15,051 nt of DNA from Ascoidea asiatica JCM 7603 (taxonomy: Eukaryota > Fungi > Ascomycota): NCBI GenBank assembly GCA_001600695.1, contig BCKQ01000020.1, forward strand, positions 212,770 through 227,820. The letters are read 5' to 3'. Positions 1-15,051 of the stretch are shown in pieces. The notes beneath the pieces were generated by a model that had not been told where the DNA came from, searched no databases, and saw only the letters and a list, made by a program, of their open reading frames with translations. Positions within the stretch are counted from its first letter, which is position 1. The number at the start of each line of letters is the position of its first letter. The position numbers and the translations under genes are program-made.

Positions 1-180
1 TTTGGTGGTGTTGCAATTGATAAAAGTGAAGGTATTGATATTGCAAATTCAATGAATAAAAATGATAAAGCAGTAATTTTACAAAATCATGGAATTTTAA
101 CAGTTGGTAAAACAGTTGATGAAGCTGCATATTTATTTGGTTTAATGGAAAGATCTTGTGAAATACAATTGAAAGTTGAA
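1..180 (+). repeat. Left arm of a long inverted repeat (pairs with 14840-15019); runs off the window edge
   Basis: Position n matches the complement of position 15020-n. Bases 1-137 are identical; mismatches occur only at 138, 140, 141 and 171 up to base 180. Confidence 0.95.
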
Positions 181-336
181 GCTGCTTCAAATTTAAATAG
201 TTTACCAAAAATTTTAATTAATGATAATGATGCTTATTATACCAGTTTAATAATGAATGATTCTGATACTGTTTATGGAATGTTTCAAAATGAATATGAT
301 TATCAATTATCTTTGAATAATGATTTTCTAAATTGA
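1..336 (+). CDS. Class II aldolase/adducin head-domain protein (Mug14-like), 3' part only; 5' end lies outside the window
   Basis: Frame 1 is open from base 1 (FGGVAIDKSEGIDIANSMNKNDKAVILQNHGILTVGKTVDEAAYLFGLMERSCEIQL...) to TGA at 334-336. ILQNHG(I/L)LTVG.TV.EA is the class II aldolase/adducin metal-binding motif. The ATG at 52 is internal. Confidence 0.9.
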   Translation, partial: FGGVAIDKSEGIDIANSMNKNDKAVILQNHGILTVGKTVDEAAYLFGLMERSCEIQLKVEAASNLNSLPKILINDNDAYYTSLIMNDSDTVYGMFQNEYDYQLSLNNDFLN

Positions 337-11719: not shown

Positions 11720-12289
11720 AAAAGAATATACAAAAGTAAACAAGAAGAAGAAGAAGAAGAAGAAGAAGAAGAAGAAGAAGAAGAGAATAGTAATAGTGAA
11801 TTTATATCAAATTTAAAAATATTTTATTTAACTTTCAAAGAAATAAGTAAATATAATGGAGTTTCAGAATTTAAAGAAGTGATTAATGAATATATTAATA
11901 TAATTATATTAAATTGTATGAATAATAAAGTTTTAATTAGAAATTATTGTAAACAATTAATTTATTTAATTAATAAAGATTATAGTTATTGGAATATAAG
12001 TAAAATGAAAGAAATTTTAGAAATTATGAATACAATTTTAGATATTTTAAATTTGAATGAATTTAATGATATTAAAAAAAAAGATTTTCTCAATTGTTTA
12101 AATGAAGAAATTATTAATAATAGTTATATTCCAATTGGAGAAGATGAAGAGAATTATTAAGTTTATTAGATTATTGTATTGAAATTAATCAAATTGGAAT
12201 CACCAGATCAATGAATATTCATTCAAACTGCAGCAGGAATTATTGTCAATGCTTATTCCATACAACACTTCAATAAAAATGATCAATAA
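11720..12289 (+). pseudogene. Coding-like remnant with no ATG at its 5' end, an apparent frameshift and internal stops; family unknown
   Basis: One frame is open from 11720 to 12160 (KRIYKSKQ-E14-NSNSEFISNLKIFYLTFKEISKYNGVSEFKEVINEY...), with the first in-frame ATG only at 11918. Protein-like sequence continues in the -1 frame from 12151 (ELLSLLDYCIEINQIG...) and again in the original frame at 12215-12289 (IFIQTAAGIIVNAYSIQHFNKNDQ*). Confidence 0.45.
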
Positions 12290-12334
12290 ACCTTTAATTT
12301 TTTATATTCTTTATTTATATTCTTTATTTATATT

Positions 12335-12480
12335 CGCTGCACTGGGATTATCGAGAACCGAGGCAGATTGCCCGTTCGGGCATTGCCCTTTCTGGCCAAT
12401 TCCGGTCTGCACGTGCTGCTTACGTAATCCATTTGTCATCCGGTGCTTCCGCTGTATCCGTCTGTTTCCGCGCCACGGAT
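12335..12480 (+). promoter_or_regulatory. GC-rich regulatory island upstream of YAP180
   Basis: Palindromes TGCCCG-TT-CGGGCA (12369-12382), GCACGTGC (12409-12416, E-box) and TTACGTAA (12420-12427, bZIP/Yap-type); CCAAT at 12396-12400; five TCCG half-sites. Confidence 0.5.
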
Positions 12481-12582
12481 GAAAAAAGGGGTTTTCTTGT
12501 CCAGTCACCAACAATAGAAAAAGGCAACGAAACTCTGTGAATGTCACGAAAGTAATAAAAAGTATGTACAAAACAAGAGATA

Positions 12583-12615
12583 ATGAAATATATATGAAAT
12601 ATATATGAAATATAT
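12583..12615 (+). repeat. (ATGAAATATAT)3 tandem repeat in the YAP180 proximal promoter
   Basis: Three perfect 11-nt units. Confidence 0.9.
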
Positions 12616-12680
12616 ATTTTAATTATATTCATTCATATTCTATTTAATATTCAATAATATCCTATTCTATTCTAGAAATA

Positions 12681-14040
12681 ATGACAACTTATGAGAAAAT
12701 TGTAAAAGGTGCAACTAAGATTAAATTAGCTTCTCCAAAACCAAAATATATTGAACCAATATTATTATCAACTTCAAATAATAATGATTTTAGAAATGTA
12801 ATGAAATTTATTTCAATCAGATTACAAAATTCAAATTATATTATAATTTTAAAATCTTTAATTGTTTTACATTTAATGATTAGAGAAGGTGAATTAAATA
12901 AAACTTTAAATTATTTATATAAAAATTTAAATATTTTAAATATTAATATTAATATTATTACAATTAATAATCATAATCATAATAATCATTCAAATGATAA
13001 TGATGATATAAATTTAAATTTTTTAAAAAATTATGCAAATTATCTTATAACAAGATCAAAACAATATCAATTAACTAGAATAGATTATGTAAGATATGAA
13101 AAATCAATTCTTAAACAATCTTCTTTATCTTCTTCTTCTTCATCTTCTTCCAATAATAATAATAATAATGGTGGTAGATTAAGAAATTTATCAATTGAAA
13201 AAGGTTTACTTATAGAAGTTGAAAGTATTGAAAATCAAATAAATTCTTTATTATTATGTAAAAATAATGAATATCAATTATCAAAAAATATTTTATATTT
13301 AACTTCTTTTAAATTATTAATTAATGATTTACTTTCTTTATATCAATCTTTAAATGAAGGTGTAATAAATATTTTAGAACATTATTTTGAAATGAATAAA
13401 TTAAATTCATTAAAATCTTTCTGAAATATTTATAAAATTTTTGTTAATTTAACAAATAATGTTGTAAATTTTTTAAAAATTGCAAAACATTTAGAAAAAA
13501 TTTCAAATTTAAAAATTCCAATTATTAAACATGCTCCAACTGCTTTAACTAATTCTTTAGAAGATTATTTAAATGATAAAGATTTTGAAATTAATAGAAA
13601 ATTTTATTTATCTGAAAAAAATAAAAAAAAAAATTCTCAATCTATTCATAATCATAATCATAATCATAATAATAATGATAAAGATAAAGAAAGATTTAAA
13701 AAAACTAATGAAATTAAAAATTTAAAATTAATTGATAACAAAATTAAAGATGAATCAAATAATGAAATTAATAATAACAATAATAATAATAATAATAATA
13801 ATATTAACAATAACAATAATGAATTAATTGTACAACAAACTGGTTATAATCCTTGGGCATTGGCATTACAAAATCAAATTCAAAATCCAATTCATATTAA
13901 TCAAGTCTTTATACCAATTCAACAACAACAACAACCATTACAATCTACCATGCAAACAGGAATGCAACCTATAATGCAAACTGGATTTCAAACTGGTATG
14001 CAAACTGGTATGCAAACTGGAATTCAACCACTACAATTTC

Positions 14041-14081
<41 letters not shown>

Positions 14082-14591
14082 CCTGTAATTCAACCATTAC
14101 AAATGCAACAAATGCAACAACAATCTTTACAACAACAACCTGTAATTCAAATTCCAATGCAAACAAATGTTCAAAATCCTTTTATAAATCAAACACCAAC
14201 TTTATCAATTCAAAAAACTGGTACAAGTAATCCATTCTCTATGGATAATATTAATACAACAATTAATTCTACTATTAAAAGATCAAAAACAAATCCATTT
14301 TCTTTATCTTCAACAACATCAAATTCAAATGTAATCTCAAATAGTAATCCATTTAATTATGTTAATAATGAAGCTAATTTAAATTTAATTCAATCTCAAA
14401 AAACTGGTAATAATCCATTTACTTCTACTATTAATTCAAATAATAATATTAATAATTCAAATGCTACTTTTGGTGGTTTAGAAAATTTACCAACAATTCC
14501 AATTTTCAATTCAAATAATAATTTAAATAATAACTTTAATAATTCAAATAATTTAAATAATCTATATAATAATAATCAAAGTTTAATATAA
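12681..14591 (+). CDS. YAP1802: Clathrin coat assembly protein AP180 (Yap1801/Yap1802 family, ANTH domain), interrupted by one in-frame TGA at 13422-13424
   Basis: The N-terminus MTTYEKIVKGATKIKLASPKPKY...KSLIVLHLMIREG...LNEGVINILEHYFEM is an ANTH domain. After the TGA the same frame continues NIYKIFVNLT...KIPIIKHAPTALTNSLEDYLND and stays open into the 13860-14591 ORF, which carries five NPF motifs, QxTG repeats and polyQ. The two track ORFs are therefore one gene. YAP1801 and YAP1802 cannot be distinguished. Confidence 0.9.
14040..14081 (+). repeat. (CAA)14 polyglutamine tract in YAP180
   Basis: Read directly from the sequence. Confidence 0.95.
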
Positions 14592-14653
14592 TTTCATATA
14601 TTTATATATAAATTACTTTATAAATCTTAATTTCAATTTCAATTTCAATTTTA

Positions 14654-14692: not shown

Positions 14693-15051
14693 TTAATTTA
14701 AAAAATCATCATTTAAACTTAATTGATATTCAAATTCATTTTGAAATTCTGCATAAAGTGATTCATAATCTCCTGTTGCTGATTCTGTAAAATTTGCAAT
14801 TTCATTTGGAATTATTCTTTTTTTTAGATTTGAAATACTTTCAACTTTTAATTGTATTTCACAAGATCTTTCCATTAATTCGAATAAATATGCAGCTTCA
14901 TCAACTGTTTTACCAACTGTTAAAATTCCATGATTTTGTAAAATTACTGCTTTATCATTTTTATTCATTGAATTTGCAATATCAATACCTTCACTTTTAT
15001 CAATTGCAACACCACCAAAGTTTTCATAAACTGAATGAGAATTATAAAAAA
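14693..15051 (-). CDS. Class II aldolase/adducin head-domain protein, second paralog, 3' part only
   Basis: Frame is open from the window edge: FYNSHSVYENFGGVAIDKSEGIDIANSMNKNDKAVILQNHGILTVGKTVDEAAYLFELMERSCEIQL...FQNEFEYQLSLNDDFLN*. Confidence 0.9.
   Translation of the reverse strand, partial: FYNSHSVYENFGGVAIDKSEGIDIANSMNKNDKAVILQNHGILTVGKTVDEAAYLFELMERSCEIQLKVESISNLKKRIIPNEIANFTESATGDYESLYAEFQNEFEYQLSLNDDFLN
14840..15019 (-). repeat. Right arm of the inverted repeat (pairs with 1-180)
   Basis: 176/180 identity to bases 1-180 in reverse complement. Confidence 0.95.

What the first reader, a model, noticed from the sequence alone, without database searches (positions are those of the whole stretch)
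13401..13445. Single in-frame TGA in the YAP180 ANTH domain that appears to be an extra (inserted) codon
Seen in sequence: the region reads TTA AAT TCA TTA AAA TCT TTC TGA AAT ATT TAT AAA ATT TTT (LNSLKSF*NIYKIF). The frame is otherwise open across all 1911 nt from 12681 to 14591, and conserved ANTH sequence (KHAPTALT.SLE.YL.D) resumes right after the stop, so this is not a frameshift. From memory of the family: homologs have 10 residues between F(E/D)(M/L) and (I/L)YK.F (e.g. PICALM YFDM-KKNQCKEGLD-IYKKF), whereas here there are 11 positions counting the stop. Deleting CTG (13421-13423) gives SLNIY and restores the conserved Leu; deleting TGA gives SFNIY. TGA is an ordinary stop in this DNA: it ends the left aldolase where the paralog has TAA, and the Trp codons I checked are TGG. 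Inference: either a recoding site (readthrough or stop hopping) giving a short ANTH-only form and a full-length adaptor, a very recent 3-nt insertion null allele, or an assembly error. The undecayed 389 downstream codons argue against an old pseudogene.
Basis: partly seen in the sequence, partly recalled or inferred. Interest (0 to 1): 0.8.

Follow-up and report, generated by a model that had tools for sequence, protein, structure and literature searches.

The report
Inserted stop codon breaks YAP180 gene
A yeast endocytosis-adaptor gene (YAP180/AP180 type) carries one extra, inserted TGA stop codon in a helix of its membrane-binding domain, which looks like a very young loss-of-function allele (less likely an assembly error) and not a recoding signal, so it is ordinary.

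Summary
Window 12681-14591 (+) is a single-copy YAP180/AP180-type gene of an Ascoidea-like yeast (nearest ortholog A. rubescens, 69%). It has exactly one in-frame stop, TGA at 13422-13424. ANTH homology continues on both sides. The segment between FEM and IYK has 11 positions here against 10 in 235 of 235 homologs and in solved CALM, and a profile HMM puts the stop in an insert state. The site lies inside a long, confidently modelled helix.

Nothing supports recoding:
- There is no stimulatory context and no downstream RNA structure (z = -0.05).
- There is no tRNA-Sec.
- TGA-A ends a neighbouring ORF.
- No lone TGA occurs in 328 conserved-domain matches genome-wide.

A second lone TGA in an ABC transporter is an ordinary Ser-column substitution. 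Earlier unchecked first-stage notes on this same genome list further lone premature stops, both TAA and TGA.

The 388 downstream codons, including five NPF motifs, are intact and collinear with the ortholog, so the lesion is very young. The best reading is a real, recent 3-nt insertion that makes a null allele, possibly heterozygous or private to the strain (about 0.6). Interest is low.

The parts
12681..14591 (+). YAP180/AP180-type clathrin-adaptor gene, 636 sense codons plus one internal TGA, terminal TAA
   Evidence: Best homolog is the A. rubescens ANTH-domain protein (69% identity over the N-terminal piece). It is single-copy in the 20.3-Mb genome.
12681..13421 (+). N-terminal 247 codons: ANTH domain up to eight residues into its long penultimate helix. 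This is the only product if translation stops at the TGA.
   Evidence: Pfam PF07651 residues 3-241 = profile 1-219, E=5.4e-34. The PIP2-site residues K20, K22 and Y23, invariant in alignment A1, are present.
13395..13427 (+). The 11-position segment NKLNSLKSF*N between FEM and IYK. Every homolog has 10 positions here.
13422..13424 (+). In-frame TGA, followed by A. It is the supernumerary codon in the best-scoring placement.
   Evidence: hmmalign insert state and column scoring. The DNA alignment to A. rubescens opens a 3-nt gap opposite window C-T-G at 13421-13423. Removing CTG or TGA both give homolog-compatible residues (SLN or SFN).
13425..13577 (+). Rest of the ANTH domain after the stop (NIYKIF...IIKHAPTALTNSLEDYL)
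   Evidence: Pfam PF07651 profile 227-276. 47 of the first 60 aligned residues are identical to A. rubescens.
13578..14588 (+). Low-complexity adaptor tail, intact, collinear with the ortholog
   Evidence: BLASTP of the whole post-stop piece to P0001 residues 234-621, E=9e-53, with conserved islands ELIVQQTGYNPWALALQ, KRSKTNPF and TFGGLENLxTxPxF.
14175..14420 (+). Five NPF motifs (at 14175, 14229, 14292, 14346, 14412), the EH-domain-binding motifs typical of AP180-type tails
   Evidence: Motif count. The role of NPF motifs is from established knowledge of the family.

Best explanation
A real and very recent 3-nt insertion, most simply CTG into a Leu codon or TGA between codons, put a stop codon into the single-copy YAP180 gene of the sequenced strain. 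Ribosomes terminate at codon 248. The 247-residue product lacks most of the long helix, the last three helices of the ANTH domain and the entire NPF-bearing tail, so it cannot link cargo, EH-domain proteins and clathrin. The transcript is probably also degraded by nonsense-mediated decay (inference). The allele is therefore a null or near-null. It may be heterozygous, segregating, or private to this strain. It is tolerated because AP180 function is dispensable for viability in yeast. Shown: the anatomy, the supernumerary position, the intact downstream sequence, and the absence of recoding features. Inferred: that the variant is real rather than an assembly error, and its effect on the protein and mRNA.
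For: There is one stop in 637 codons. There are 11 positions against 10 in 235/235 homologs, and the stop is in an HMM insert state. CALM 1HF8 aligns without a gap there. The A. rubescens ortholog DNA lacks the 3 nt. The insertion point is inside helix 225-254 of a pLDDT-94 model of the ortholog's ANTH domain. The downstream 388 codons are intact and collinear with the ortholog, E=9e-53, with 5 NPF motifs. Given the target size for disabling mutations, staying intact by chance limits neutral divergence since the lesion to about 1.7-5%. No intact paralog exists. The assembly's reading frames are clean: of 328 conserved-domain matches (Pkinase, MFS_1, ABC_membrane, Helicase_C, AAA, Mito_carr), only 3 contain any stop and none contains a lone TGA. 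The inserted bases are not a homopolymer or tandem-repeat change, which is atypical for a consensus error. The genome carries at least one other young nonsense allele: an ABC transporter at C8:137032-137034, with TGA in a column where the two closest tandem paralogs have Ser, and 450 + 983 codons open. Cells lacking both Yap1801 and Yap1802 are viable, with a cargo-specific Snc1 uptake defect (PMC2711619).
Against: No read-level or second-assembly confirmation was possible. No same-species or sister-species sequence closer than 69% identity was available. A non-repeat 3-nt insertion that lands as an in-frame stop is a rare class of mutation. The gene is single-copy and conserved across fungi, so a fixed null allele would be somewhat surprising.
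Confidence: 0.6

Rival explanations
1. Assembly or consensus error: the strain's real gene has 10 positions here and no stop, and the 3 nt are an artefact of assembly or polishing, for example at a heterozygous or poorly covered site.
For: This is a single lesion in an otherwise perfect, conserved, single-copy gene. No read evidence could be obtained. The 0.96-0.97 word shares of the three runs cannot resolve one site.
Against: Reading frames are clean across 328 conserved-domain matches, with no frameshift-split kinase. The change is 3 nt of non-repetitive sequence, not a homopolymer length change. Three runs from two studies hold 96-97% of the sampled words of the gene, though this is not site-specific.
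Confidence: 0.2
2. Two separate events: an older, tolerated one-codon insertion in this lineage (for example the Phe), followed by an ordinary point nonsense mutation of the conserved Leu (TTA to TGA) or of the next codon.
For: Column scoring gives near-ties when the stop is placed in column 9 (Leu in 198/235) or column 10. The faster MAFFT mode chose such a placement. TTA to TGA is a single substitution. The C8 transporter shows that point nonsense TGAs occur in this genome.
Against: It needs two rare events within two codons of each other. No homolog among 235 tolerates an extra residue in this segment. Phe fits the Leu column well (29/235), and Lys-Ser-Phe fits columns 7-9, only if the stop is the extra position.
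Confidence: 0.1
3. Programmed recoding: regulated UGA readthrough or a one-codon bypass yields both an ANTH-only short form and a full-length adaptor.
For: The downstream 388 codons are intact and conserved. The gene is single-copy. Unchecked first-stage notes mention other in-frame TGAs in this genome.
Against: The context TTC-TGA-AAT-ATT matches neither the CAR-YYA type 3' motif nor an A-rich 5' context (motifs from my own knowledge of yeast readthrough). There is no downstream structure: MFE -10.3 kcal/mol against -10.2 for shuffles, z = -0.05. There is no matching landing codon for a hop. The same TGA-A tetranucleotide ends the ORF at 771-1586. No lone TGA occurs in about 54,000 conserved-domain codons. 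The A. rubescens ortholog has no stop or extra codon here. Any inserted residue would shift the register of a conserved helix. The short form would end mid-helix, not at a domain boundary. The one other lone TGA examined is a plain substitution in a redundant paralog.
Confidence: 0.04
4. Selenocysteine insertion, or TGA reassigned to a sense codon in this organism.
For: The codon is TGA.
Against: There is no tRNA-Sec above threshold: best hit 35 bits against a gathering score of 47, from hits 71-73 nt long. The stop aligns to a gap, not to Cys. Trp is TGG 19 times with no TGA in SLH1. TGA ends genes in the window. No lone TGA occurs in 328 domain matches.
Confidence: 0.01

Closest known systems
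S. cerevisiae Yap1801/Yap1802 (yeast AP180 homologs)
   Same: N-terminal ANTH domain with the KxKY lipid-binding stretch, a long low-complexity tail with NPF motifs, and a nearly identical N-terminus. Homologs named Yap1801 appear among the hits.
   Different: The gene is single-copy here rather than a paralog pair. The open reading frame is interrupted by a supernumerary TGA at codon 248. The protein ends about 85 residues earlier than the A. rubescens ortholog.
A. rubescens ANTH-domain protein ODV57942.1 / XP_020044249.1 (P0001)
   Same: Nearest ortholog: 69% identity over the first 243 residues and collinear over the tail.
   Different: It has 10 positions (NFNNAKRALK) and no stop where the window has 11.
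CALM/PICALM and AP180 ANTH domains (PDB 1HF8, 3ZYK, 1HX8)
   Same: Same fold family (E about 1e-26 to the ortholog) and the same 10-residue spacing in YFDM-KKNQCKEGLD-IYKKF.
   Different: These are metazoan proteins with different tails. They were used here only as a structural yardstick.
Programmed stop-codon readthrough (for example the TMV-type UAG-CAA-UUA context, or UGA between gag and pol of the Candida Tca2 retrotransposon)
   Same: A single in-frame stop with a conserved open frame after it.
   Different: None of the stimulatory features is present, and the stop is in a helix rather than between domains. The examples are recalled from my own knowledge and were not tested.
Segregating loss-of-function (nonsense or indel) alleles in natural and collection yeast strains
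   Same: A lone, young disabling lesion in an otherwise intact, dispensable gene. A second example in this genome was verified here (C8 ABC transporter).
   Different: The lesion is an in-frame 3-nt insertion that creates the stop, rather than a point substitution or a frameshift.

Membership tests
AP180/CALM/Yap180 clathrin adaptors | N-terminal ANTH domain | tested here: met
   PF07651 matches on both sides of the stop, profile 1-219 and 227-276. 541 homologs at E<=1e-3.
AP180/CALM/Yap180 clathrin adaptors | Basic lipid-binding stretch near the N-terminus (K..KxK[HY]) | tested here: met
   K20, K22 and Y23 are invariant in alignment A1 and present in the window protein as KGATKIKLASPKPKY.
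AP180/CALM/Yap180 clathrin adaptors | Unstructured tail with NPF (EH-domain-binding) motifs | tested here: met
   Five NPF motifs, all after the stop. The tail is collinear with the ortholog.
AP180/CALM/Yap180 clathrin adaptors | C-terminal clathrin-binding motif | tested here: inconclusive
   The protein ends 26 residues after the conserved FGGLENL island, while the A. rubescens ortholog continues about 85 residues further. No clathrin box was sought.
AP180/CALM/Yap180 clathrin adaptors | Uninterrupted reading frame (a functional gene) | tested here: not met
   TGA at codon 248.
Programmed stop-codon readthrough genes | Stimulatory nucleotide context around the stop | tested here: not met
   The context is TTC TGA AAT ATT. 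The same TGA-A ends a neighbouring ORF.
Programmed stop-codon readthrough genes | Downstream RNA structure | tested here: not met
   z = -0.05 against shuffles over 120 nt.
Programmed stop-codon readthrough genes | Stop conserved in orthologs | tested here: not met
   It is absent from A. rubescens and from all 251 other homologs. Closer relatives were unavailable.
Programmed stop-codon readthrough genes | Translation past the stop (footprints, peptides) | not testable with these tools
   No RNA run is on record and no proteomics tool is available.
Selenoproteins | tRNA-Sec in the genome, and TGA aligned to Cys or Sec in homologs | tested here: not met
   RF01852 best hit 35 bits, below the gathering score of 47. 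The stop aligns to a gap.
Nuclear code with TGA as sense | In-frame TGAs spread through conserved genes | tested here: not met
   No lone TGA in 328 domain matches. SLH1 has 19 TGG and 0 TGA.

The most novel reading that the evidence does not exclude
The TGA is a maintained recoding site. Low-level or regulated UGA readthrough inserts one extra residue into the ANTH helix and doses the full-length adaptor against an ANTH-fragment form, in a yeast lineage (Ascoideales) already known for ambiguous CUG decoding.
Probability: 0.04. Interest if true: 0.6.

Novelty: new member of a known kind. Interest (0 to 1): 0.12.

Why it matters
If the variant is real, the sequenced strain is a natural knockout or near-knockout of its only AP180-type adaptor. 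That is a modest point for anyone using this genome for gene-content or endocytosis comparisons, because the gene should be annotated as disrupted, not absent. The case also shows why a lone in-frame TGA with an intact downstream frame should not be taken as evidence of recoding. In this genome such cases fit the ordinary load of young loss-of-function alleles. Only the unlikely recoding reading would have wider interest.

Tried and rejected
I worked beside them, on 12681 onward. Local scripts did read the whole window file.
- Indirect second-assembly evidence: exact look-ups of the 247-aa product and of the 213-aa ATG-started downstream ORF found nothing on record.
- Word-based search with the first 70 post-stop residues found nothing. 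With the 247-aa piece, the closest hit was 45% identical. With the A. rubescens ortholog, no congener was found.
- Reference-free scan for long frames split by one stop: it was noisy. Most events were antisense or low-complexity frames, retrotransposon pol copies, or a multiply broken REV1-like relic. It was used only to show that the YAP180 case is unusual in 215 kb.
- The weak second ANTH-like hit on C12 has four stops in 41 codons and no ORF, so it is not a paralog.
- MAFFT --auto placed the gap upstream of the stop. This was rejected in favour of the profile-HMM and column-score placement, but it is kept as a rival.
- A tiny intron was rejected because only one codon is extra. A frameshift was rejected because the frame is the same on both sides. 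Hopping was rejected because no landing codon matches TTC.
- A pattern scan of metagenome contigs was not run, because the expected yield was low.

Full report
**Observation.** The window is about 21% G+C. Positions 12681-14591 (+) form a 637-codon frame whose only internal stop is TGA at 13422-13424. Pfam's ANTH model matches profile positions 1-219 before the stop (E=5.4e-34) and 227-276 after it. It is therefore one domain in one frame, interrupted by a stop and not by a frameshift. The window's other ORFs are ordinary housekeeping genes: class II aldolase fragments at both ends, an ECM11-like gene, mitochondrial ATP synthase subunit b, and an SLH1/BRR2-type helicase of 2019 residues.

**What the gene is.** An exhaustive phmmer search with the 247-residue N-terminal piece found 541 homologs. 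The best is 69% identical and is the ANTH-domain protein of Ascoidea rubescens DSM 1968. It is followed by proteins of Pachysolen, Spathaspora and Ogataea, and by proteins that their sources name Yap1801 or clathrin coat assembly protein AP180. The post-stop piece aligns collinearly with residues 234-621 of the A. rubescens protein (E=9e-53). Conserved islands in the otherwise low-complexity tail are intact, as are five NPF motifs. The window's genome is 20.3 Mb in 71 contigs and has no second copy. A weak ANTH-like hit on contig 12 has four stops in 41 codons and no ORF. The organism is therefore an Ascoidea-like budding yeast. I did not establish the species.

**Is the stop an extra codon?** In an L-INS-i alignment of the gene (read through with X) with 57 full-length homologs, the X stands alone in its column. 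An alignment-free motif count gives 10 residues between [FY]F[EDQ][MLIV] and [ILV]Y in all 235 homologs that match the anchors, against 11 in the window. Solved CALM (1HF8) aligns to the A. rubescens ortholog across the segment without a gap. A faster MAFFT mode placed the one-residue gap upstream and put X into the conserved Leu column, so I tested the placement explicitly. A profile HMM built from the homologs alone aligns the X in an insert state. Column-by-column scoring ranks 'stop is the extra position' best at -7.97 bits. There are near-ties when the stop sits in column 10 (-8.00) or column 9 (-9.37, before crediting any residue at the stop). With the stop as the extra position, Lys-Ser-Phe fits columns 7-9 (R/K, A/T/S, L/F). 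At the DNA level A. rubescens reads AGA GCT TTG AAA ATT TAC, and the aligner opens its 3-nt gap opposite the window's CTG at 13421-13423. Removing either CTG or TGA gives homolog-compatible residues. In every placement, an insertion never seen in 235 homologs and a unique stop lie within two codons of each other. This argues for one event.

**Where it sits in the fold.** AlphaFold2 on the A. rubescens ANTH domain with a 47-sequence alignment gives mean pLDDT 94.1. The insertion point, between L232 and K233 of the ortholog, lies eight residues into helix 225-254. Termination there removes most of that helix, the three helices after it and the whole tail. A residue inserted by readthrough would shift the register of a helix that contains the invariant Tyr235.

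**Tests of recoding.**
- The context TTC-TGA-AAT-ATT has none of the readthrough-promoting features known to me, and it offers no landing codon for a hop.
- The 120 nt from the stop onward fold no better than shuffles (z = -0.05).
- No tRNA-Sec reaches Rfam's threshold: the best hit is 35 bits against 47, from hits of ordinary tRNA length.
- TGA ends the left aldolase fragment, and TGA-A ends the ORF at 771-1586. SLH1 uses TGG 19 times and TGA never.
- Genome-wide, 328 matches to six large Pfam families contain stops in only three cases: one match with TGA plus TAG, one with TAA and one with TAG. The families are Pkinase (128 matches), MFS_1 (12), ABC_membrane (17), Helicase_C (58), AAA (20) and Mito_carr (93), about 54,000 codons by my rough estimate. 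None has a lone TGA, and no kinase is split by a frameshift.

TGA is therefore a normal terminator here, and the assembly's frames are clean.

**Other lone stops in this genome.** Earlier first-stage notes, all unchecked, list lone premature stops of mixed type: TAA in an ECM3-like gene, TAA in NBP2, and TGA in a transporter. I located a transporter that fits the last note. It is an ABC-membrane-family (PF00664) ABC transporter gene in a tandem family on contig 8, with a single TGA at C8:137032-137034 (-) between open segments of 450 and 983 codons. In the alignment with six intact paralogs, that TGA occupies a filled column where the two closest paralogs have Ser. It is an ordinary point nonsense mutation (TCA to TGA would be one step) in a redundant gene, not a supernumerary codon. 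In 215 kb scanned without a reference, the YAP180 TGA was the only clean single-stop split of a conserved single-copy gene. The rest were antisense or low-complexity frames, retrotransposon copies and a multiply broken REV1-like relic. The picture is a small, ordinary load of young disabling alleles of all stop types, not a TGA-specific phenomenon.

**Age.** At this composition a random frame stays open for 388 codons with probability about 1e-17. The downstream part offers 181 stop-creating substitutions plus indel targets. Staying intact by chance (P=0.05) therefore limits neutral divergence since inactivation to about 1.7-5%, depending on the assumed indel rate. The lesion is very young, or the frame is still protected, for example by a functional second allele in a heterozygote.

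**Real or artefact.** This could not be settled. Three DNA runs from two studies hold 96-97% of the sampled words of the gene, which does not resolve a single site. Exact-product look-ups in public assemblies returned nothing, possibly by design. The clean frames elsewhere and the non-repetitive nature of the 3 nt favour a real variant.

**Consequence and verdict.** In S. cerevisiae the yap1801 yap1802 double mutant is viable and shows a cargo-specific defect in Snc1 internalisation (PMC2711619), so losing the single AP180-type gene is plausibly tolerated. My estimates are:
- a real, recent 3-nt insertion null allele, possibly heterozygous or private to the strain: about 0.6
- an assembly error: about 0.2
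- an older tolerated insertion plus a point nonsense mutation: about 0.1
- programmed recoding: about 0.04

The biology is ordinary.

Noticed in passing
G000 contig 8, 133537-139389 (loci L032 and L037); stop at C8:137032-137034, minus strand: An ABC-membrane-family (PF00664) ABC transporter in a tandem family has one in-frame TGA (context ACT TGA ATT) between open segments of 450 and 983 codons. The TGA aligns to a column where the two closest paralogs have Ser, so it is a point nonsense allele and also very young.
   Followed up: yes
G000 contig 20, about 11860-14600 (locus L004): A REV1-like translesion-polymerase gene is broken by several stops (TAA at 12543, TGA at 13500, others in shifted frames) and contains an N run. 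It looks like a decaying relic near the contig end. The identification rests on motif resemblance only, not on a Pfam scan.
   Followed up: partly
G000 contig 20: 19250 (-) and 157472 (+); N runs at 36388-40052, 91349-94988 and 127147-131698: Retrotransposon pol-like frames (RT/RNase H and integrase text) carry in-frame TGAs. Several multi-kb stretches read N (withheld), and scattered single Ns cluster around them.
   Followed up: no
window 1-336 (+) and 14693-15049 (-): Inward-facing, near-identical C-terminal fragments of class II aldolase/adducin-domain genes (PF00596) bracket the window. They diverge in their last 45 or so residues and end in TGA and TAA respectively.
   Followed up: partly
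G000 contig 12, 441613-441735 (locus L002, 1501-1623): A 42-residue stretch is 56% identical to ANTH residues 21-62 but has 3 TAG and 1 TAA inside and no ORF. It is possibly a very old relic of a second AP180-type gene, or chance.
   Followed up: partly
G000 contig 6, about 130-135 kb and 323-332 kb: Pairs of kinase genes with identical open-frame lengths (577 and 552 aa) and near-identical scores suggest a segmental duplication about 190 kb apart.
   Followed up: no
window 14511-14591: The YAP180 protein ends 26 residues after the conserved FGGLENLPTIPIF island, whereas the A. rubescens ortholog continues about 85 residues further. A C-terminal clathrin-binding segment may be missing or diverged.
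   Followed up: partly
G000 contig 14, 349748-350482 (-): This is the only one of 128 protein-kinase domain matches with internal stops (1 TGA and 1 TAG, open frame 260 aa). It is a likely pseudogene or contains an intron.
   Followed up: no
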